Assembly: GCF_964204865.1 (NCBI RefSeq)
Contig: NC_135253.1
Span: 10,230,001-10,294,000, forward strand
Direction of reading: 5' to 3'
Source: Styela clava
Taxonomy: Eukaryota
DNA: 64,000 nucleotides
In this document: piece after piece, positions 15,971-64,000 of the stretch
Numbering within the stretch: position 1 is the first letter of the stretch
How the letters are laid out: each line of letters opens with the position of its first letter
Notes under the pieces: generated by a model
The model's input: only the letters and a program-made list of their open reading frames with translations
What the model was told of the DNA's origin: nothing
Databases searched by the model: none
Translations under genes and position numbers: made by a program

Positions 15971-18706
15971 ATGGCGCAGAATGTTGCAACAAAAATATTT
16001 TCGAGTATTGATTGCGGACAAGGAGCAGTCCGGGCTGTGAGGTATAATGGTGTGTATTTTTTACTCCTTTACCAAATGAATTATAGGGATTAAAAATCGT
16101 CGTTACAAGAAAGATTCATTTATTCTCTGTTCAGCAACTTGGCGAGTTTGTTTTGATTCTAGAATGAAAATAGGCTATAGACATTCGAGGTTGTATGATT
16201 GATTGAAAATATGGGGTTTAATGTGGTTGTTATTGCATTCGCATTGTACAGCACTAATACAGTAATATCTATGTGTGCTAAAAAATTCATCACCCTCAAT
16301 TAGCCAGTGCCTAGCTTCAAATGTTTGTAGCATCTTCAGCCAACCATATTTTACTTTCAGCTGATGGAAATTACTGTATAACATGTGGAAGTGACAAGAC
16401 CATTAAATTATGGAATCCTAACAAAGAATTATTAATAAAGAAATACACTGGTCATGGTTCAGATGTTTTAGATGCATGTGGATCATGTGACAATGCACAA
16501 CTTGCATCTGGTGGTAGTGATAAAACTGTTATATACTGGGATGTTGGAAGTGGTCAGGTAAATTAATTCTCATAGCAGCAATCCATTCCAATTAGAAGTA
16601 ATACAAATTGCTGTGCTGAACAAGCTTATTGCACTACGGTTTGGTTTTTTTTTGTGTGTATTTCCATTGTCTTTATTGGTGGGTGCATACTAATACATTT
16701 TAAAATTTGTTCCAACCCATGCGCACTGTCTGGTAATTCCGCACATTGTTTGTACTTTTTGGATTGTTTTGATGATAAAAAAAAGTGATGAGTTTTCAGT
16801 TATACTGGCTTTGCAAATTAAACTTATTTATTATTTATCAAAGCTGAAAGTGTTGGTTTTTCAAACTCTCAGTTTCAATGGATACTCTTTTGGCTCAATT
16901 CAAAGAAATCTCAATAAATCTTATTTTTCACACCGTTATAGATTATGCGACGATACAGAGGGCATGTCGGAAAAGTGAATTGTGTTCAATTTAATGAAGA
17001 GTCGACCACTATACTTTCTGGTTCTGTAGATTCTTCAATTCGAGCGTGGGATTGTAGATCACGCAAACCAACTCCTTACCAAATTATGGATGAAGCAAAA
17101 GACAGCATTACATCTTTACAGGTCGTCAGTTTCTTGGCTTCCTTTTAATGCATGAAATTAGCAATCAAGACATTGCTAATATGTCTTGAAATACAGGGCG
17201 TACCCAGGATTTTGAACCTTACCTCTCTTTCGAAATATACAAAAAGGAGCTTTTCTGTATCGTACATATAAATTTTTTGTAGTTTGAAACGGCTTTTTAG
17301 ACTCAAGACTTTTGAAAACCCTCGTTTTTCAGCAAAACCTGCTAGCTGTTACAGTCTAACTTGGCAATTATAAATTTTAGAACCTCCCCTTTGAAATACC
17401 TAGCACAACACTCCTGTAGAAATCTTTCGTTATCACTTGTTCTATGAAAAATAACAGTTTACTGAGATTGTTAAACTGTGGCTCAATAAAGAAGTATTTG
17501 GCTGTCAAATCACTCTGAATCATCAAACTCTCTGTCGAATCACATTTAAGTTTTTGTTATTAAAGACTCTCGTGCTTTTAACACAGGTCAATGATCATGA
17601 AATTCTCTCAAGTTCTGTCGATGGCAAAGTTCGAAGATATGATATAAGAACTGGAAAAATGTTTTCTGATTTCATCGGATCAGCTATTACTTATGCTGTT
17701 TACACTAAAGATTCTCAATGTGTTTTAGCATCAAGTCATGACCACACAATCAGATTGTTGGATGTTGATTCGGGAGAAATGTTAGGTTTGTACAAAAGTG
17801 TGATTAATAGTCCTTTATTGTTGAATTTTCTATTTTAAAAGTTTTTTTTCAGCAGAGGGGGCAGATAATTTAACAGTTTGCAACACAATGTGCCATATGT
17901 TCCAAAATTGAAAATACTGTTTTCACATCACAGGCAAAATTTCATTCCATAGGCATTGAAATCAAATTGTCCATTAATAATATTTGATAGTAACACTAAC
18001 AGTATACCTATGAAGTACAAAGTGAACTGAATATAAGCATTCTTATATATCTGTGGAATTCTCCTGTCTCACCTGTTTCACTTTATACAGCATCTTTTGC
18101 TCTAACCAAGTCTCTATACTGTCAGCCATGAATATTACTGGAATCTGCCTGGATCTATATTGCCTGCCCAATTCATCACACTCTGGGTTAGATGGGGGCA
18201 CTAATTCCAAGTCCCGTATCGAACTGTAATTACTGTTGCAACAATCACTTTTCATAGTATTTGTAAAATTTCCACAGTATTGGTAGAGTATCAGGTAAAC
18301 CGGGACCCGAATATCGAGATTAATAGCTAAATTAATAATTTCTGATCTCTTTGGGTGTTTATGTAATTCAAACACAAGCTACAGCATTTTAAATTTATAT
18401 GAATTTAGTAATTGAAGAAATTGTTTTTAATACACAGGAGAATATACTGGACATAAAAATAGCAAATACATGATAGAATGCGGATTGAATGCTAAAGACG
18501 ATCATGTGATCAGCGGATCTGAAGATGGATTCATTTATATTTGGGATTTGATTGAAGCGAAAATTCAACACAAAATAAAGTTAAAAGAAAACAGAGTAGT
18601 ACATTCAATCAGCCATCATCCTGAAGAAGTCAGCCTTCTTGCTGCAATGGATAATTCAATAATTGTAATAAGAAGTGAAGAGTTTGAACCGAAGGATAAA
18701 ACATAA
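15971..18706 (+). CDS. WDR83: WD repeat domain-containing protein 83 (MORG1)
   Basis: Exons 15971-16049, 16361-16557, 16942-~17121, 17587-~17785 and 18439-18706 splice in frame: IDCGQGAVRAVRYNADGNYCITCGSDKTIKLWNP...YTGHGSDVLDACGSCDNAQLASGGSDK...RRYRGHVGKVNCVQFNEESTTILSGSVDSSIRAWDCRSRK...DHVISGSEDGFIYIWDL. These are diagnostic WDR83 motifs. Confidence 0.95.
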
Positions 18707-19243
18707 ATAGCATTCAATGAGGAATGTGACAGCAAGGTGACTTACAAGTACCGTGGATGTGAGAGAGGATCGTCCAGAATCTGCATCTGATAAGAGTGAT
18801 ACATGGGATATTATTTTACTTTGAGATCGCAGATCGAACAGGACAAAACAGTATAATTGACATTTTCAACAAGTCATTTTAAGAAAAATTCATCATAAGC
18901 ATTCAGAATAATGCATCTGACATCTGATGGTAGGGCAAGAAATGAACTGCTAAGAAATATAAAAAAATCTGCCTTAATTTAGTAATGTGCTGTCACTAGA
19001 TTTTGAGCATTTTCGATGGGTCTCGCTCATACCTTGTGTAACACATTATACACTTTATTTAGGTAACTAACAAGCCCCAAAATCCACTACTCGTGTAATT
19101 TTAGGCAACTCGTACTTCGTACTCAAAACCATTTATTGGTTTTGATTGATGTGACATATAAAATAAATAAATTTTGCTGATGTTAGTTCACTTGATTAGT
19201 TGGAAGTACCAGTATATCTCATTATAAAAAATGAGATCAGTTA

Positions 19244-20092
19244 CTAATACACAAGTTTTGAGACTTGTTCTTTTAAATATTTTGTATCTGGTTGTTGACC
19301 GAAGGCACTCTCGCTTGCAACAATTGCACCATCGATAGGATGTAGTATATGTGGCTGCAAGACTACCTCCAAAGTTTGATAGTCTGTCAGTCTCAAAACG
19401 TCTTTATCACTCCTCAGCACGGTGTGAGGTAATTTTCTGATCTTATGGACATGTTCCGGTTTTATTCCCAGGTCTATGCTGTCACATAAAATCTCTGCTA
19501 GCTTTTCCAAAGAGGGAGCAGCCTTTCGATCTATAGCAACCTCTGTGAAATCACTATTGCTTTTCAGCATGTTTGCCAGTCGGACACAGAGAATGATATA
19601 ATCCGGGTTAATTACTAGTCCTGCTGGTGACCATTGGGTTCCAACTGTGCAGGTAACGTGAGAAGGCTGAAATATAAAGCCTTGGTGACCGAGGTGAGTA
19701 TCTTTTGATGCATCACTTATATCGACATGATTTGATTTTGTGTACAAGAATTCTGGATTAGCTAGATAATTTGGTTTAAATGATGATTTCTCGTTATTAC
19801 TGTCTCTGCCTTCTACTGGGGGTGCTCCTAAAACTGCTCTGACGCTGTTATTTGATGTCAAGTCTGCTGGAATTTGCCCGTCTCCGTTTTGTATTGTTTT
19901 ATCTGCCCCACAATCCATCAGCTTTTTCACGGCCTGAAGATGACCTCGTTTCGATGCCCAGTGTAGTGCTGTCCATCCATTCACTCCATTTTTCGAATTT
20001 ATGTCAACGCCCGCCGACAGCAGATTATCTATCTCATCTAAATTACCAATACAAGCAGATTCTCTCAGTAATTCTTCATTTTGATCTTCCAT
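19244..20092 (-). CDS. ANKRD40: Ankyrin repeat domain-containing protein 40 (intronless CDS, 282 aa)
   Basis: LLRESACIGN...VDINSKNGVNGWTALHWASKRGH ankyrin pair, FKPNYLANPEF motif and C-terminal DFTEVAID...KIRKLPHTVLRSDKDVLRLTDYQTLEVVL, all typical of ANKRD40. Confidence 0.93.
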   Translation of the reverse strand: MEDQNEELLRESACIGNLDEIDNLLSAGVDINSKNGVNGWTALHWASKRGHLQAVKKLMDCGADKTIQNGDGQIPADLTSNNSVRAVLGAPPVEGRDSNNEKSSFKPNYLANPEFLYTKSNHVDISDASKDTHLGHQGFIFQPSHVTCTVGTQWSPAGLVINPDYIILCVRLANMLKSNSDFTEVAIDRKAAPSLEKLAEILCDSIDLGIKPEHVHKIRKLPHTVLRSDKDVLRLTDYQTLEVVLQPHILHPIDGAIVASESAFGQQPDTKYLKEQVSKLVY

Positions 20093-20279
20093 TACTTTTT
20101 GATATTACAGGAATTTTTGAGTAGTTGGCAATGACCGGTACAGTACAAAAATGTCATGAGAGAAATTGATCTCGCCACAACCGACGTCAAAATGCTTTTC
20201 AACTGTAAAACCACTGTGATTCGGTTCAGCGCTCCATGACTGTAAAATATAGTTCATTTTGACCTCTGCTTTGATACAT

Positions 20280-20415
20280 TCACTGACTCTACTTTAAAAA
20301 CCGGCGCAAAACCCCTGGCGACTTCATTTCTACTTTGTGCGCGGCGCGTGAGCCTTGCGCGATTTTGCAATTTTATGTATTGCTACTGCAGCATTCAGTC
20401 GAAGCTTGAAAGCTA
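20280..20415. promoter_or_regulatory. CpG-rich bidirectional promoter with a CDE/E2F-CHR-like composite site
   Basis: Lies between divergent starts (20092 - and 20666 +). Local CpG cluster GTGCGCGGCGCGTGAGCCTTGCGCG. TTTAAA-AACC-GGCGCAAAA at 20293-20311 reads on the minus strand as TTTTGCGCC-4nt-TTTAAA. Confidence 0.5.
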
Positions 20416-20665
20416 GGCTATTGGAATTATTGCAATTTTTAGATTTCATGGAAATTACTAGATGTATCTTTATTCAGTTATTTATGTCAGGGCTGTAGAG
20501 TCATAATTTTGTTACTGCAAAGACTTTTTTTGTGTAGAAAATAATTGGCAATGAGATGCGTATGTCAGGACTTTCTGTGATTTAATGCATTATTCTCACT
20601 ACCTAGGCGTGTTTCTTTTTTAAATCTTTTACATTATCTCACAGTATTCCTAGCTGCATTTATTG

Positions 20666-21019
20666 ATGGATGGCCTGACTGCTATTTTGAATGATGCGCT
20701 TCCTTTTCTGGAATATGATGAATTCTTGAAAATGGTTTCTCCAAAATATAAACAACATCCTCAAGTTTGGCGATTATACCAGGCTATAATTGAAGAAAGA
20801 GAAGAGAGAAAACAGAAAGTGATGAAGATATTTTTAGATGGAATTAAAGAAAGAGAAAATGAAACTGAATTAACAATTCAAGAAGCCCTGGAAATTTTAA
20901 AGAAACAAATTGAAAATCTTGACTGTACTTCAGACAGGTTGAATTCTATACAAAACTTGGAAAAACAGCATCAAAATTTATTAAAAGCTCTTTCACAGAA
21001 AGAGTCTTTAGATAAATAA
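20666..21019 (+). CDS. 117-aa helical/coiled-coil protein, possibly Cnl2/Nkp2 (kinetochore)-like
   Basis: Clean single-exon ORF with protein-like composition. Upstream acceptor CTCACAG ends at 20644, ATG at 20666, AATAAA overlaps the stop. FLEYDEFLKMVSPKYKQHPQVWRLYQAIIEER resembles my recollection of the Cnl2/Nkp2 motif (roughly ISLxQFTxLFPKRLxSHPQIRxLYRELQxxR). Confidence refers to it being a gene; the family call is tentative. Confidence 0.7.
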   Translation: MDGLTAILNDALPFLEYDEFLKMVSPKYKQHPQVWRLYQAIIEEREERKQKVMKIFLDGIKERENETELTIQEALEILKKQIENLDCTSDRLNSIQNLEKQHQNLLKALSQKESLDK

Positions 21020-21160
21020 AGCTTGTATGGTATTTGAGTCAATGATCTTATTGGTGTAACTGTTCTTTCTAATCTAGAAATTCGAATATAGAATTAGAAA
21101 TGTGGAAAATGCACGCAGATTTACAGTAATACTGAATGAGTTCAAAATTGCTATATATAG

Positions 21161-21459
21161 CAGTGGTTCTCGAAACTTTTTAAGCTGTGTCCTCTTTTTA
21201 GAATTTGCTAAAACTCGCATCCCACCTCAAAAATAACTAGCTAACAATGAGCTACAAATAACATATAGTAAGAAGAAAGTATGTTTTATTCAAAAAAACA
21301 CATGGAACTCAAATATCCTGAAAACAGAAATGTAAATATCCAAAATCAGGTGGACAAGATTGAATCTAACAAATATTTTTAATTATCTTCACGTCCTTTA
21401 AAAAACTTTTCTACTCCCCCCCCCCTTGTGCGGCACGCCCCATCGTTTGAAAACCACTG
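21161..21459. mobile_element. hAT-type MITE
   Basis: TIRs CAGTGGTTCTCGAAAC / GTTTGAAAACCACTG; 8-bp flanks ATATATAG/ATATCTAG. Confidence 0.8.
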
Positions 21460-21634
21460 ATATCTAGGAATAGTCAAAACACGAATATGACCTAGCCTCA
21501 TGTCTTATTGAACCATGGTGCTTATGAAAATGACTTGCTGTGAGAATTTTTAAATTTGTATTGTATTGTGTTTTCATAAAAATTAGTAGTATCTTATTCA
21601 GCAACAGAATTGAACCACATTGGGCACTCTTGGT

Positions 21635-21871
21635 TAGGATCACCATATTTGAAAAAGCAAAATTCCGGACAGTGCATGACTATTTTCATAACCTCATAGT
21701 AAAAAATATGCGCACAGTACGAAATAACAATGTTCTGTATTAGCAGTGTGCACAGTACGATTGCAGATTCCGGACATTTGAGTACGGTATTTTTTGAATT
21801 CTTCCCCGACGCAAAATTTAACCCTAAATTACGGATATGTCCGGATTTTTCCGGGCGGTATGGAAACCCTA
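21635..21871. mobile_element. hAT-type MITE (TAGGG termini)
   Basis: TAGGATCACCATA...TATGGAAACCCTA, subterminal CCGGACA/TGTCCGG motifs, perfect 8-bp TSD CTCTTGGT. Confidence 0.85.
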
Positions 21872-22159
21872 CTCTTGGTAACATTCAACTGAAACCTAAA
21901 ATTAGATGTGCTTGTTATTAAGGATGTTGTGTTCACTGTCTCTGTTATGCAATATAAAGAATATTGTGTGGTGGACAAAACATCTAAATAATCAATTGAT
22001 GTCATCAACTTGCTTATTTGGTGTGATACATTGTTTACATCTCTAGGATGCTCATAATTTACTTTCATAAAATTCATGCTTTTGTGTACTCACTAGAATG
22101 AACATAATCATACTTTTTATTGTGGATATTTTTTAGTCTCTAATTATTCCAATATAAAC

Positions 22160-25100
22160 ATGGCTTCCAATAGATCAAACTTTGGGATTCTGTTTTTCAA
22201 ACGTCAGTGGAGACTATTCGGTATCATGTTTGATAATATCAAATCAGCTTCATCAATCATGTTTATTTTTCTGTTTGTCTTGTCAATGGCATGTAAGTAG
22301 ATAAGACAAATTTTTTCATCTACATTTGGTATTCTATACAGACTTGAATTCATTTTTTTTGTGAGAAGTCTCGTGTCCCGTTGAATATATGTCTTTCTGC
22401 TGTGCTTTGAAAGATTGCAGCCTCTCTGGCTAGGATCAGCTTTTTTAACATACAATAATTGTTCAGTGATGTGGTGATGATGAGCATAGCACTGGAGCTG
22501 TGGGCCTTTTAAGTTAATTGTTTCCATTCATTAATGTAATGGCAATCAACGTGCCCTTGTTTCAATTAATTTGAGTAAAATATATATCTTATCAACATCA
22601 AAAACAAATTCACTATCTGGTTTATGTTTGATTCGTGATTTCTACATCACTAATGAATGGTTATTTTCTTGATATTTTAGTGCAAGTTATCATCTATGAA
22701 GCTGGTCTTGTACCATCAATGTATTTTGAAGTTCTTGGTGCTAAAGACCAAGATGCTTTCAAAAGTGTTGCAATCTATTCAATGGAAATTATCATCATTA
22801 ACGCTTTGGTTTGTTCTTTTCCCTACTACAGAATTCTCACATTTGTGGCCTGCAATTCATGCTAGTAATGTTATATCTGAAGTTTTTAATATTCTTGAAT
22901 ATGCCTTGCAAATATTTTGTATTTCAGAGTTTTTGGTCAGAAAAGCCATGATGCTGATAAGTTATGGTTTATAAAGTAAAGTCAAATTTTACAGAAGTCT
23001 GTAATTTTGATAATAATCCGTTGTTTTGAAAATATTCTTTTCTGAGAAATGTTTTGCATTTTTGGCTTCCATTGGAATAAATTCTTTCAGCATTATTCGT
23101 CTATACCGGGATTATATAGTGAATAATATAAGTTCTACATATTTGGTTCATTCTTATTTGATTAAACAATACGCAGGCTCGTTAGAAAAAATGTGCAATA
23201 AAAACCCAATTTTTGCTGAAGACATCTCACCTTAAAATTTAAAAATATGCTACAATATTATATTTGTAGCAACTGTTCTTCACCGTCCAGAAAGATTTGG
23301 TGCTATTGTCATGTTAACTTGACGTTTTATTGTATGACTGGTAATTGGCACTAAGATTCCCAGATATTGGAATGTATAAGTCACATAGGTTGCTTTACAA
23401 TGCGAGTACACTTGACAATATGACAGGACAAAGATATGGAATTACCCTGTCTTCTTCGGTGGCATTAGGAAGCATATTATTCTGAATAAAAAATGGCAGT
23501 GGCAGTACACCGATTATAACAGTAGTAATATGCAAAATTTTTGTGTTTTTCAGATGAAGAGTACTGTGACCTACCTTTCTCAACTGTTGTATGTAAAATG
23601 GAGGGGGATGCTATGTAGTCATATACATACAAGATACTTTACTGCAAACAACTATTATAAACTGAATGTGTTGAAACCTTCTCTCGATAATATGTAAGTC
23701 TTATTCTGAAGAATTGGTGAAATGTAAATTCTCTTGATTTTGATTTGGTTTATTGTTTGCTCACAGAATTTATGTTATAACTGCACAAGTAAGCATTTGC
23801 ATATTTGCAATTCTGTGGAGTAGCCTAGTAGTTAGTCTGCTGACTACAGTCAAATGGCTACACAGCAATTTAGCAAGTGCATTTAGTTATTATAATTTGA
23901 TCATTTTTGAATAAAAGCTGAGTGAATGCTGACAACAAATGTAGGCACAATCCATAAGTTAAGCCCGGCTGAAATATTTGTCAAGTTGAAACTGAGGTTG
24001 GATAAAACCATAACAATTCTGCATTATATATCTTCAATTTCCCTTCCTTTGGGAAATCAAATCTTCTAAAAAAGTAGCTAATTCATGATGTTTTACTCCT
24101 TGCTTTAGAGATCAAAGAATTGTTCGTGATGTAAATTTGTCATGTCAAGAATGGAGTACACTGATGTCTCGTCTTCTTGTTATACCATTCACTATTGCAT
24201 ACTATTCTTACCAATGCTTTATCAGCACCACTTATCTTGGACCAATATTTATCTATGTATATTTTATATGTGGAACAATTATCAATAGATTTCTTATGTC
24301 TCCTGTTGTTAGGACTACTATAACCAGAGAGAAGCATGAAGGAGACTTCAGGTTGGTTTATTTGTTTTAGAACTACCGTATGTGGATCACTAATTGCATG
24401 AATAGATTATACTTATATGATTGGGTTGGTATTGGTATATAGCCACATTAAGCATAGCATGAATGTAAAAATATTCATGAAACATCATTTTATTCGTAAT
24501 TCAGATGTTATTTATGCAATTTTATTGTCAAATTGGTATTGTTGAAATTTTATTTTGACATTGAATTGATTTCTAAATAAAATTCTTTATCTGCAATGTA
24601 TATGATTGACACATTGGCTTAACCTTGACAGCATTTTTCATCAAAAGTCTGTAATTTGTCTAAAAATAACCTGAAATCTTTTTTATTAAATGTTTCAGAT
24701 TTCAACATTTGCAAGTGAGAGTGAATGCTGAATCAATGGCATTCTATCAAGCTGAACAAATTGAGAATTATAAAAGTAATAATAGGTATGACTTTAAGCA
24801 TGTTCACCCTATCTCTGAGAAAAAAAGTTTCATATAAATAGCCTTATTATAGATAGGCTGATAACAATCGAAATGACTGTAATCTTCCTGCTTTCAGTCA
24901 AAGATAAGCATTTATCTTTTTTTATGAATTTATTCAAGAAATCTATGTCCTGAAATTCCCAAGGTCTGTTTAGTGTTTCTTTACAAATTTCTGAAAACAA
25001 AAAAAATTAAGAAGTCATTTTGATTTGATCCATACTTCTCTAATGTAGCAAAATCATATATTATGTATGAAAAATGGATTTCTAGCTTGTATATTTTTCG

Positions 25101-61909: not shown

Positions 61910-64000
61910 TTATAGAGATAGTTTTTCTGGCGGTTTTGATATTCTGCCAGATCTTGTTTTATAAGGTATGTTTGAATTACTGGACGATTCTGGAAAATTA
62001 GGAACTGGGTCTACATTGTCTCTGTCATTTTGAGATTCATCAGTCTCTTCAGTAGCAGTAGAGGTAGGAGTTGAATTTCTATCTCCCACATCAACATCAG
62101 GTATTCCTGTTGGAATTGCAGCTGGTATTCTCTCACTCATTCTAAAATCTTGATTTCCTTCACGTACCATTACATCATCAGCAGAAAATCGATGTCGAAT
62201 ATGATCGAGATGACGTCTAAAAATTCTTCCATCGTTCAAACGAACACGACACATTTGACCCATAACTTCAGTTACTGTGGCAGGTAACCATTTGAAACGA
62301 GATCCAACGACTTCTGTAATAAAAACTGGGTCATCAATGTGAAAAGTTCTTATTATTCCACTTGGAACATTCTCTGCTGACTTCTTCAAACGTGATGAAG
62401 GTGCGATTAGATCAAGATGCGTTCTAATCTTACGACGAAAAAGTAATTCCGACGGAGTCTGACCAGTCGTTGTATGTGGTGTAGTTCGGTATTTAAATAA
62501 CCACCGAACAAGTCTGACTGACAAAGATGCTGGTGCTTGTTTCTTCAATCCAAGTTTAACTTGTTTTACCATTGATTCAGCTTGGCCATTAGAAGCCGGA
62601 TGTCTCGGTGGTGAAAACAAGTGCTTCACTCCATTTGCCTTCAGAAATGTTGCAAATTCGTCACCTGCAAAACAACCAGCGTTGTCAGTGACTACAACTA
62701 GTGGTCCATGTGTAGCAAATGAAAGTCTGACTTTTTCAATAGTTTCATGAGCAGAAACTGAAGATGTAATCCACACATCTGGCCATTTGCTAAACGCATC
62801 AACAATAACAAGAAGCATTTTCCCATCAACTGGACCGGCATAGTCCATATGTATTCTTTGCCATGGACCATTAGGATAAGACCATGGGCTAGCAGGAACT
62901 TGAGGTGCACTGGGACGTAACTGTTGACACAAACTGCAAGATTTCACCAACTCTTCAATATCAGCATCAACCCCAGGCCACCATACATGATTACGAGCAA
63001 TTCTTTTCATAGAACAAATACCAGGATGACCATCGTGAAGTAATTGCAACACTTTCTGTCTTCCTTGTGGCGGAATAATTACTCGACAACCCCAAAATAA
63101 ACAATTTTCATGGACACTTAGTTCCGTCTCTTTGCTTCTATAAATTTGTAATTCTGGGTCTATGTCAGAAGATTTTGGCCAACCCATTTGAGTATGATGC
63201 ATAACTGCGGACAGTACAGGATCTCTTCTCGTCCAAGACTGAATTGCATCAACTTTAACAAGGGTAGAATCGACTGCTTCAAGAAGATTCACTACATCAC
63301 CACAAGGCGGTATATAATCCGGTTTAACAGGCAAAGGCAAACGACTTAGTGCATCGCTATTGGCTTGGTTTTTACCTGGAACATACACTAATTCGTATTG
63401 ATATCCATCAAGTAATACTTTCCAACGGATCATTCTCGGTGGAGCTGCATCAGGAAGTGGCTTATTCTTCCCAAGTAAACCGAGAAGTGGCTTGTGATCA
63501 GTTTCCAAAACAAACGGTCTTCCATATAAAAATGAATGGAACTTTGTAACAGCGAATACTAGAGCTAATCCCTCTCTGTCCAATTGGCTATAATTACGCT
63601 CTGGTTTTGACAAAGATCTGGATGCAAAAGCCACAGGACGTTCTCCTTCCTGCGTTATTACAGATAAAACTGCTCCGATTCCATAAGGACTGGCATCTGC
63701 AGAAACAATGACGGCGGCATTTCCGTCAAAATGAGCAAGGCATGGAGCATTACACAATAGCGATTTCGTTTTCTTAAAAGCTTCCACTTGCCTTTTATTC
63801 CAGTGCCATCGAACATTCGAACGAAGAAGTTCATACAAAGGAGCAGCAACAGTTGATAAATTTTTAATGAATTTACCATAATAATTAAGCATCCCCAGAT
63901 ATGAGCGCAACTGATGTATATTTTGTGGTTCTGGGACATCCAGAACAGCTCTCAGATTATCTTCAGTTGGTTGAACTCCAAGTTTATTTATACGATATCC
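61910..64000 (-). CDS. pol: Pol polyprotein C-terminal part (RT thumb, RNase H, integrase)
   Basis: LRSYLGMLNYYGKFI; ADASPYGIGAVL..RPVAFASR..NYSQLDREGLALVFAV..TDHKPL..NSDALSR; HHCC finger (LHDGHPG..CSLC); catalytic HMDYAG / TDNAG / QAESMV; tail TRSGRISKPPEKL. The frame is open; the track's start at 63910 is internal. Confidence 0.95.
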   Translation of the reverse strand, partial: GYRINKLGVQPTEDNLRAVLDVPEPQNIHQLRSYLGMLNYYGKFIKNLSTVAAPLYELLRSNVRWHWNKRQVEAFKKTKSLLCNAPCLAHFDGNAAVIVSADASPYGIGAVLSVITQEGERPVAFASRSLSKPERNYSQLDREGLALVFAVTKFHSFLYGRPFVLETDHKPLLGLLGKNKPLPDAAPPRMIRWKVLLDGYQYELVYVPGKNQANSDALSRLPLPVKPDYIPPCGDVVNLLEAVDSTLVKVDAIQSWTRRDPVLSAVMHHTQMGWPKSSDIDPELQIYRSKETELSVHENCLFWGCRVIIPPQGRQKVLQLLHDGHPGICSMKRIARNHVWWPGVDADIEELVKSCSLCQQLRPSAPQVPASPWSYPNGPWQRIHMDYAGPVDGKMLLVIVDAFSKWPDVWITSSVSAHETIEKVRLSFATHGPLVVVTDNAGCFAGDEFATFLKANGVKHLFSPPRHPASNGQAESMVKQVKLGLKKQAPASLSVRLVRWLFKYRTTPHTTTGQTPSELLFRRKIRTHLDLIAPSSRLKKSAENVPSGIIRTFHIDDPVFITEVVGSRFKWLPATVTEVMGQMCRVRLNDGRIFRRHLDHIRHRFSADDVMVREGNQDFRMSERIPAAIPTGIPDVDVGDRNSTPTSTATEETDESQNDRDNVDPVPNFPESSSNSNIPYKTRSGRISKPPEKLSL

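What the first reader, a model, noticed from the sequence alone, without database searches (positions are those of the whole stretch)
20666..21019. Orphan 117-aa ORF resembling fungal kinetochore Cnl2/Nkp2
Seen: ILNDALPFLEYDEFLKMVSPKYKQHPQVWRLYQAIIEEREERKQKV, then LTIQEALEILKKQIENLD and a coiled coil. From memory, fungal Cnl2/Nkp2 N-termini have IL..(L)...ISLxxFxxLFPKxxxxHPQIxxLYxxLxxxR followed by a similar second helix. Nkp1/Nkp2 are best known from the fungal Ctf19/CCAN complex, while vertebrates have CENP-R. Inference: a candidate animal Nkp2-type CCAN subunit, implying a fungal-like inner kinetochore module in this lineage.
Basis: partly seen in the sequence, partly recalled or inferred. 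Interest (0 to 1): 0.75.

Follow-up and report, generated by a model that had tools for sequence, protein, structure and literature searches.

The report
Likely animal Nkp2/Cnl2 kinetochore protein gene
A small, intronless, transcribed gene encodes a 117-residue helical protein that is most probably a very divergent relative of the fungal inner-kinetochore protein Nkp2/Cnl2, but its expected partner proteins were not found, so a kinetochore role remains an inference.

Summary
The ORF is real: ATG 20666 to TAA 21019, 117 aa, single copy in the 377-Mb genome. Transcriptome-like contigs from three studies cover it without any splice. Both listed variants in it are synonymous. Only two relatives turned up among 1.84 billion representatives (54% and 37% identity).

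No test reaches a formal threshold for Nkp2/Cnl2, but every independent look points there:
- Pfam Cnl2_NKP2 is the only family hit by all 3 of 3 family members, in the same register, at 13-18 bits against a cut-off of 27.
- The ORF is the best Cnl2_NKP2 match in a six-frame scan of the whole genome.
- Language-model look-alikes of two members are Cnl2_NKP2 clusters in ranks 1-3, with Nnf1 further down.
- The Atlas structure search for the distant member puts Cnl2_NKP2 clusters first and second.
- The AF2 model (pLDDT 85) shows a helical head plus a long C-terminal helix.

The genome has intronless Nnf1, Mis12, CENP-N and CENP-I. Nkp1/Fta4 and CENP-O/P/Q/U/R were not detected, which is inconclusive.

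Verdict: probable new animal member of a known family. [quoted passage not shown] Interest is moderate.

The parts
20666..21019 (+). Coding sequence, 117 codons plus TAA, a single exon
   Evidence: ORF. Contigs of runs X1 (20296-21087), X5 (20690-21246) and X9 (20628-20969) lie on it colinearly with no joint inside. It is single copy in G000. Relatives are P0001 and P0003.
20666..20863 (+). N-terminal helical 'head', residues 1-66 (helices 2-11, 17-23, 32-65). This is the most conserved part of the protein.
   Evidence: AF2 model with pLDDT 85-95 over residues 1-60. 18 of the 23 invariant alignment columns lie in residues 1-45. VIA-align places model residues 1-66 on a yeast KMN-junction chain labelled Nn (Z 6.7, rmsd 2.4 A, 65 aligned residues), tied with unrelated rows.
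20708..20824 (+). Stretch matching Pfam Cnl2_NKP2 (PF09447) positions 19-57 of 65, residues 15-53
   Evidence: 16.3 bits, E 0.01 in hmmscan. 16.9 bits and the best hit of the whole genome in six frames. P0001 and P0003 match in the same register.
20876..21013 (+). Long C-terminal helix, residues 71-116, a candidate coiled-coil strand
   Evidence: AF2 secondary structure with pLDDT 80-85. Only generic coiled-coil matches were found for it.
20296..20665 (+). Possible 5' leader, present in one contig only. It holds 8 upstream ATGs with short uORFs.
   Evidence: X1 contig of 791 nt spans 20296-21087. uATG list. Contigs cannot show a true start, and the X9 and X5 contigs begin at 20628 and 20690.
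21015..21087 (+). AATAAA at 21015-21020 overlapping the stop codon, followed by a short 3' UTR
   Evidence: Motif position. The X1 contig ends at 21087.
20193..20295 (.). Gap of about 100 bp between the divergent transcripts of this gene and the ankyrin-repeat gene on the minus strand. Inferred to be a shared bidirectional promoter.
   Evidence: Contigs of the minus-strand neighbour end at 20169-20192 and the X1 contig of this gene starts at 20296. CpG observed/expected is 1.16-1.17 over 20200-20499 against 0.24-0.51 further on. Promoter function is inferred, not shown.

Best explanation
The ORF is a real, intronless, transcribed, single-copy gene. Its 117-aa all-helical product is a highly divergent member of the Cnl2/Nkp2 family, the Mis12-like group of kinetochore proteins. 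By analogy with yeast, its N-terminal helical head would pair with the head of an Nkp1/Fta4-like partner. Its C-terminal helix (residues 71-116) would join a parallel helical coil with the C-termini of CENP-Q and CENP-U, capping and stiffening the COMA arm of the inner kinetochore (CCAN). What is shown: the gene exists, it is transcribed, it is conserved, its helical architecture, and a weak but consistent similarity to Cnl2_NKP2. What is inferred: orthology, the partners and kinetochore localisation.
For: Gene reality:
- The ORF is confirmed.
- Colinear contigs from 3 runs in 3 studies cover it, while intergenic bins have zero depth. Neighbour contigs break at 18436 beside a canonical minus-strand GT, so the runs behave as RNA.
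- 2 of 2 listed variants in the CDS are synonymous.
- Relatives are P0001 (E 1.3e-28, 54% identity) and P0003 (E 2.1e-4, 37% identity).

Family:
- PF09447 is hit by 3 of 3 members (E 0.01, 0.0026, 0.098), at profile positions 19-57, 21-60 and 19-51. It is the only family shared by even two members, and the only hit of P0003.
- The ORF is the best PF09447 match of the 377-Mb genome.
- Atlas feature ranks 1-3 are Cnl2_NKP2 clusters for the window protein (0.87, 0.87, 0.84; 179, 180 and 163 shared features) and for P0003 residues 55-159 (0.85, 0.85, 0.84). Nnf1 comes next as a distinct family.
- In the Atlas structure search for P0003, rows 1 and 2 are Cnl2_NKP2 clusters (TM 0.57 by query).
- The architecture, a head plus a long helix, fits the yeast description of helical-hairpin heads plus a C-terminal four-chain coil (PMC6407923, passages).

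Context:
- The genome has a CCAN and a Mis12 complex: CENP-I 190 bits, CENP-N 57.9 bits, Nnf1 33 bits and Mis12 29.8 bits, each in one open frame.
- A separate Nnf1 gene exists that matches human PMF1 (E 1.6e-8), so this ORF is not the Nnf1 orthologue.
Against: - Every Pfam score (13.2-18.3 bits) is below the curated 27-bit cut-off.
- The genome-wide E-value of the PF09447 hit is 2.39.
- Unrelated families score alike on single members, for example TIR at E 0.0021 and SHE3 at E 0.0024.
- The three members are related, so their hits are not independent.
- Atlas scores are below 0.9, which the tool calls 'a lead only'.
- PDB sequence searches with the protein and with the profile did not find yeast Nkp2.
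- Foldseek found nothing at E <= 0.001.
- The VIA-align hits to Mis12-complex head chains (Z 6.7 and 6.1) are tied with many unrelated helical rows.
- Nkp1/Fta4, CENP-U and CENP-R gave no match. CENP-O, -P and -Q gave only noise or a WW-domain coiled-coil false hit. The same method found four other kinetochore genes.
- The one contig with a long leader carries 8 upstream ATGs.
Confidence: 0.62

Rival explanations
1. It is a lineage-restricted small coiled-coil protein of some other function. The resemblance to Cnl2/Nkp2 is chance similarity between short helical segments.
For: All matches are sub-threshold. Other unrelated families reach similar E-values on single members. The family has only 3 members among 1.84 billion representatives. 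No Nkp1 or COMA partner was found. Helical models give middling Z-scores to many folds.
Against: Only Cnl2_NKP2 recurs in all 3 members, and in the same register. Two Atlas queries 37% identical to each other both put three Cnl2_NKP2 clusters first out of 7.7 million clusters. The structure search does the same for P0003. The match lies in the conserved head, not in the generic coiled coil.
Confidence: 0.22
2. It is a member of the wider Mis12-like superfamily (Mis12/Nnf1/Nkp1/Nkp2) but not an Nkp2 orthologue. It would be a lineage-specific paralogue working with other partners, possibly outside COMA.
For: Nnf1 clusters appear among the Atlas hits at 0.75-0.76. The best structural row with a kinetochore link is a yeast KMN-junction chain labelled Nn, with a MIND-complex chain at rank 13. 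COMA and Nkp1 were not detected.
Against: Pfam Nnf1 and Mis12 do not hit any of the 3 members even at E <= 10. Bona fide Nnf1 and Mis12 genes exist elsewhere in the genome. Cnl2_NKP2 ranks above Nnf1 in both Atlas searches.
Confidence: 0.12
3. It is not a protein-coding gene. It would be a chance ORF inside a non-coding transcript from a bidirectional promoter.
For: The one full contig has a 370-nt leader with 8 uATGs. The runs are only guessed to be RNA.
Against: Two protein relatives share the start, the length and 23 invariant columns. The variants in the ORF are synonymous. The confident AF2 model has pLDDT 85 from 3 sequences.
Confidence: 0.04

Closest known systems
Fungal Nkp2 (S. cerevisiae) / Cnl2 (S. 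pombe), Pfam PF09447, InterPro IPR018565
   Same: Both are small proteins with a helical N-terminal head followed by a long C-terminal helix. There is weak sequence similarity over profile positions 19-57 of 65, found in all 3 family members. It is the top language-model and Atlas-structure look-alike.
   Different: Scores are below the family cut-off (at most 18.3 bits against 27). At 117 aa it is shorter than the Atlas fungal clusters (140-200 aa). It comes from a genome whose gene content looks animal. The partner Nkp1/Fta4 and the COMA subunits were not found here.
Nnf1/PMF1 and Mis12, head I of the Mis12/MIND complex. Tromer et al. 2019 report these as homologous to Nkp1/Nkp2 (PMC6601020, passages).
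   Same: The fold type is the same: a helical hairpin head plus a coiled coil. VIA-align aligns model residues 1-66 to a yeast KMN-junction chain labelled Nn (Z 6.7, rmsd 2.4 A). Nnf1 clusters are second-tier Atlas hits.
   Different: There is no Pfam Nnf1 or Mis12 hit. BLASTP finds no similarity to the genome's own Nnf1. Separate Nnf1 and Mis12 genes exist. That chain Nn is Nnf1 is my reading of the label and was not checked.
Vertebrate CENP-R (Pfam PF06729). Reviews describe it as the functional counterpart of Nkp1/Nkp2 (PMC9252888, PMC7614391, PMC5709738, passages).
   Same: It is a small coiled-coil accessory subunit thought to sit on CENP-Q/U.
   Different: There is no sequence relation: PF06729 is not among the hits of any member. 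No CENP-R match was found in this genome, but the tool warns that this blank does not show absence.

Membership tests
Cnl2/Nkp2 (PF09447) | Match to the Pfam model at or above the gathering score of 27 bits | tested here: not met
   The scores are 16.3, 18.3 and 13.2 bits for the window protein, P0001 and P0003, and 16.9 bits in the genome scan. The hit is consistent in register and is the only family shared by the members, so similarity is suggested but formal membership is not reached.
Cnl2/Nkp2 (PF09447) | Small protein with an N-terminal helical head and a C-terminal helix able to enter a coiled coil | tested here: met
   The AF2 model has pLDDT 85.2, with helices at 2-11, 17-23, 32-65 and 71-116. 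The yeast architecture is taken from PMC6407923 passages.
Cnl2/Nkp2 (PF09447) | Structural match to solved yeast Nkp2 | tested here: inconclusive
   Foldseek against the PDB gave 0 matches at E <= 0.001. VIA-align wide did not list an Nkp2-containing entry in its 50 rows. The Atlas structure search of P0003 put two Cnl2_NKP2 clusters first (TM 0.57).
Cnl2/Nkp2 (PF09447) | An Nkp1/Fta4 partner (PF13093) in the same genome | tested here: inconclusive
   The six-frame scan found 0 candidates. Small, divergent or spliced genes can be missed.
Cnl2/Nkp2 (PF09447) | CENP-Q/Okp1 and CENP-U/Ame1, plus CENP-O/P, present as the binding platform | tested here: inconclusive
   PF13097 gave none. The PF13094 hit is a WW-domain coiled-coil ORF. 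The PF09496 and PF13096 hits of 14-18 bits lie in DNA without credible ORFs. The method did detect CENP-I, CENP-N, Nnf1 and Mis12.
Cnl2/Nkp2 (PF09447) | Localisation to kinetochores and co-purification with COMA | not testable with these tools
   This needs tagging or immunoprecipitation with mass spectrometry in the organism.
Nnf1 (PF03980) | Match to the Pfam Nnf1 model | tested here: not met
   There is no Nnf1 hit at E <= 10 for any of the 3 members. The genome's true Nnf1 lies on another contig (33 bits) and matches human PMF1.

The most novel reading that the evidence does not exclude
This lineage keeps the ancestral Nkp2 subunit that vertebrates lack and have functionally replaced with CENP-R. 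The Nkp1/2-to-CENP-R exchange would then have happened inside the animals. A bolder version follows from finding neither COMA nor Nkp1 here although four other kinetochore genes were found: the Nkp2-like protein may work with a different partner set in a re-wired inner kinetochore.
Probability: 0.45. Interest if true: 0.55.

Novelty: new member of a known kind. Interest (0 to 1): 0.42.

Why it matters
Reviews and structural papers list Nkp1/Nkp2 as yeast subunits with no vertebrate counterpart. They treat CENP-R as the animal analogue (PMC9252888, PMC7614391, PMC7729030, PMC6407923; passages read). An Nkp2-type gene in an animal-like genome would give an entry point for asking when and how the cap of the CENP-OPQU arm was exchanged. 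It would also give a small, intronless gene that is easy to tag.

The surprise is limited. Tromer et al. [quoted passage not shown] Plowman et al. 2019 (PMC6823300, passages) profiled both across 109 proteomes.

Tried and rejected
Searches for more relatives:
- The search for homologous proteins with the protein gave 15 candidates and none at E <= 0.01.
- The same tool with the 3-sequence profile gave 885 candidates and only the two known relatives at E <= 1.
- A metagenome scan matched 288 pattern stretches, none confirmed.
- P0002 is a 1097-aa repeat protein with six weak stretches. I treat it as spurious.

PDB and structure searches:
- PDB by sequence gave best hits glutamate receptor 2 (E 0.13) and Swi5 (E 0.19). 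Both are chance-level.
- Foldseek against the PDB and the pdb_via second look gave nothing useful.

Single-member Pfam hits (TIR, SseB_C, Prefoldin, SHE3 and others) were rejected because none recurs in a second member.

Weak genome hits that did not hold up:
- The CENP-Q hit L008 was rejected because the ORF carries WW-type motifs and looks KIBRA-like. That reading is mine, from the translation.
- The CENP-O and CENP-P hits L009 and L010 were rejected because no credible ORF lies there.
- The Csm1 scan gave 15.8 bits and is uninformative.
- The second Mis12 hit L019 has no credible ORF.
- Rfam found nothing in 20000-22200.

Steps that could not be done:
- I could not obtain any fungal Nkp2/Cnl2 sequence from a tool, so no profile-profile comparison was run.
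- I did not determine the organism.
- An N-terminal extension through the AG at 20643-20644 was considered. It was rejected because all three frames hit stops before the ATG (read).

Full report
THE OBSERVATION

The window holds an ORF at 20663..21019 on the plus strand, 118 aa from a TTG. An in-frame TAG sits five codons upstream. The only nearby AG (20643-20644) opens no frame that reaches the ATG, so the protein starts at this Met (read). The window is AT-rich, with GC 0.29-0.43. Only 13 ORFs of 110 aa or more occur in its six frames. A protein search of the whole 377-Mb assembly finds this one copy only. The next hits have E of about 6-8, so it is neither a repeat nor a family with paralogues.

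IS IT A GENE?

A full HMMER pass over 1.84 billion representatives gave three hits at E <= 0.001:
- P0001: 128 aa, 54% identity, E 1.3e-28.
- P0003: 159 aa, 37% identity, E 2.1e-4.
- P0002: a 1097-aa repeat protein with six weak stretches, which I regard as spurious.

The three-way alignment has 23 invariant columns, 18 of them within residues 1-45. It shares the start Met. P0003 has a 55-residue extension before an aligned Met, probably an over-called ORF.

Runs of the same organism from three studies, guessed to be RNA, hold contigs on the ORF:
- X1: one 791-nt contig colinear with 20296-21087.
- X5: 20690-21246.
- X9: 20628-20969.
- X10, labelled another organism: 175 nt on 20717-20891 with 3 differences.

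No joint lies in or just before the ORF, so the gene appears intronless. The runs behave as RNA in two ways. Several intergenic bins have zero depth. The neighbour's contigs in 3 of 3 runs of organism A stop at exactly 18436 and continue with sequence not on the stretch, and 18434-18435 reads AC, a minus-strand GT donor.

The two variants listed inside the CDS (20794 A>G, 20899 A>G) are both synonymous third-position changes. The 4-nt insertion at 21011 leaves the protein unchanged. The table notes that 88 further differences were not shown. AATAAA overlaps the stop codon.

One caveat concerns the X1 contig. Its 370-nt leader holds 8 upstream ATGs, and contigs cannot show the true start.

SURROUNDINGS

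Head to head on the minus strand lies a 282-aa ORF (19244-20092) with ankyrin repeats (Ank E 2e-10). Its contigs end at 20169-20192, about 100 bp from the start of the X1 contig. CpG observed/expected is above 1 across 20200-20499. A shared bidirectional promoter is inferred.

Downstream, 21170-21460 is an interspersed repeat. It has at least 3025 first-look candidates in the genome, and the 40 scored copies (one of them the query itself) are otherwise 73-81% identical. Contig depth over it reaches the thousands. Rfam finds nothing in 20000-22200.

WHAT FAMILY?

Pfam gives no hit over a curated cut-off. Cnl2_NKP2 (PF09447) is nevertheless hit by all three members in the same register, and it is the only hit of P0003:

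| Member | E-value | Bits | Residues | Profile positions |
|---|---|---|---|---|
| Window protein | 0.01 | 16.3 | 15-53 | 19-57 |
| P0001 | 0.0026 | 18.3 | not recorded | 21-60 |
| P0003 | 0.098 | 13.2 | not recorded | 19-51 |

No other family is shared by even two members. The TIR, SseB_C, Prefoldin, SHE3 and similar hits are one-offs.

A six-frame scan of the whole genome with PF09447 returns this ORF as its best match. The score is 16.9 bits and the genome-wide E-value is 2.39, so it is not significant alone.

The protein-language-model Atlas puts three Cnl2_NKP2 clusters at ranks 1-3:
- Window protein: scores 0.87, 0.87 and 0.84, with 179, 180 and 163 of 256 features shared.
- P0003 residues 55-159: scores 0.85, 0.85 and 0.84.

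In both searches Nnf1 is the next distinct family. The Atlas structure search of P0003 puts two Cnl2_NKP2 clusters first, with TM 0.57 by query. The tool itself calls scores under 0.9 leads only.

The Nnf1 second tier fits the published homology of Nkp1/Nkp2 with Mis12/Nnf1 (PMC6601020, passages).

STRUCTURE

AF2 on the 3-sequence alignment gives pLDDT 85.2, with helices at 2-11, 17-23, 32-65 and 71-116. This is a helical head followed by a long helix. It matches the yeast description: helical-hairpin heads of Nkp1 and Nkp2 forming a four-helix bundle, and C-terminal parts joining a parallel four-chain coil with Okp1 and Ame1 (PMC6407923, passages).

The PDB structure searches add little:
- Foldseek gave 13 rows at E <= 10 and none at E <= 0.001.
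- VIA-align against 48,161 representatives gave rank 2 to a yeast KMN-junction chain labelled Nn (Z 6.7, rmsd 2.4 A, 65 residues, model 1-66) and rank 13 to a MIND-complex chain, 5t51_B (Z 6.1). All 50 rows lie between Z 5.9 and 6.9, so this is only compatible, not evidence.
- pdb_via added nothing.
- PDB sequence searches with the protein and with the profile did not find Nkp2.

THE REST OF THE MODULE

Using the same six-frame Pfam scan, I found four kinetochore genes, each in one open frame:
- CENP-I: 190 bits, E 5.7e-54, in a 672-aa frame.
- CENP-N: 57.9 bits summed, in a 328-aa frame.
- Nnf1: 33 bits, in a 194-aa ORF. It matches human PMF1 at E 1.6e-8.
- Mis12: 29.8 bits, in a 281-aa frame.

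So a CCAN and a Mis12 complex exist here, their genes tend to be intronless like this ORF, and this ORF is not the Nnf1 orthologue. BLASTP between the two found nothing.

The partners gave no credible match:
- Fta4/Nkp1 (PF13093): 0 candidates.
- CENP-U: 0.
- CENP-R: 0.
- CENP-Q: only a coiled-coil hit in a WW-domain ORF.
- CENP-O and CENP-P: only 14-18-bit hits in DNA without credible ORFs.
- Csm1: 15.8 bits.

These blanks are inconclusive. Nkp2 itself scores only about 17 bits, and spliced genes are seen exon by exon.

Earlier notes of this scan mention a CENP-W-like and a CENP-A-like intronless ORF elsewhere in this genome. I did not test them.

IS IT AN ANIMAL?

I did not determine the organism. 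The gene content is consistent with an animal: an LDL-receptor class B repeat exon, a WW-domain KIBRA-like ORF (my reading), and an Nnf1 closest to human PMF1 in the PDB.

LITERATURE

I ran four full-text searches. I read passages only, except for section 5 of PMC6601020.
- Reviews and structure papers list Nkp1/Nkp2 for yeasts only, and call CENP-R the possible vertebrate counterpart (PMC5709738, PMC6407923, PMC7614391, PMC7729030, PMC9252888).
- PMC7729030 reports van Hooff et al. as calling CENP-R 'a recent invention in animals'.
- Tromer et al. [quoted passage not shown]
- Plowman et al. 2019 profiled Nkp1 and Nkp2 over 109 proteomes, with the results in Table S1 (PMC6823300).
- None of the listed papers from these searches whose passages I read names an animal Nkp2. 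The supplements that would settle this were closed.
- PMC12606422 confirms that IPR018565 is the Nkp2/Cnl2 domain and IPR025207 (Fta4) the Nkp1 domain.

VERDICT

The gene is real and transcribed. Its assignment to Cnl2/Nkp2 is probable (about 0.6-0.7 for homology) but formally sub-threshold. The kinetochore role and the partners are inferred by analogy with yeast. It is best filed as a probable new, animal-lineage member of a known family. Interest is moderate, because a LECA origin of Nkp2 is already published.

Noticed in passing
window 21170-21460: An interspersed repeat of about 290 bp lies just downstream of the gene. It has at least 3025 first-look candidates in the genome, and the 40 scored copies (one the query itself) are otherwise 73-81% identical. 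Contig depth over it in the RNA-like runs reaches the thousands. There is no Rfam match.
   Followed up: partly
window 19244-20092 (-), transcript contigs 18436-20192: An intronless 282-aa ORF lies head to head with the finding. It has N-terminal ankyrin repeats and a C-terminal half of about 180 aa with no Pfam match. Its contigs in 3 of 3 runs break at 18436 beside a minus-strand GT, about 800 nt past the stop codon. This suggests a spliced 3' UTR or a longer gene model.
   Followed up: partly
G000 C2:21223942-21224223, C2:22052198-22053073, C2:27327108-27328385, C16:11295602-11296180 (L012, L014-L016, L018): Nnf1, CENP-N, CENP-I and Mis12 homologues each lie in a single open frame, so they are apparently intronless. 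Three of the four are on contig C2. Kinetochore genes of this genome seem to be intron-poor.
   Followed up: partly
window 61910-63910 (-): A 666-aa ORF carries RNase H, an integrase zinc-binding domain and an rve integrase core. It is a Ty3/gypsy-type retrotransposon pol fragment.
   Followed up: no
window 20296-20665: The only contig that spans the upstream region carries 8 upstream ATGs with uORFs of 4-16 codons ahead of the main ORF. Either the main transcript starts closer to the ATG, or translation is uORF-limited.
   Followed up: partly
L008 625-2127 (-) = G000 C17 near 7160521-7160871: A 500-aa intronless ORF has two WW-type motifs and long coiled coils, and looks KIBRA/WWC-like by eye. 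It was picked up as a false CENP-Q hit.
   Followed up: no
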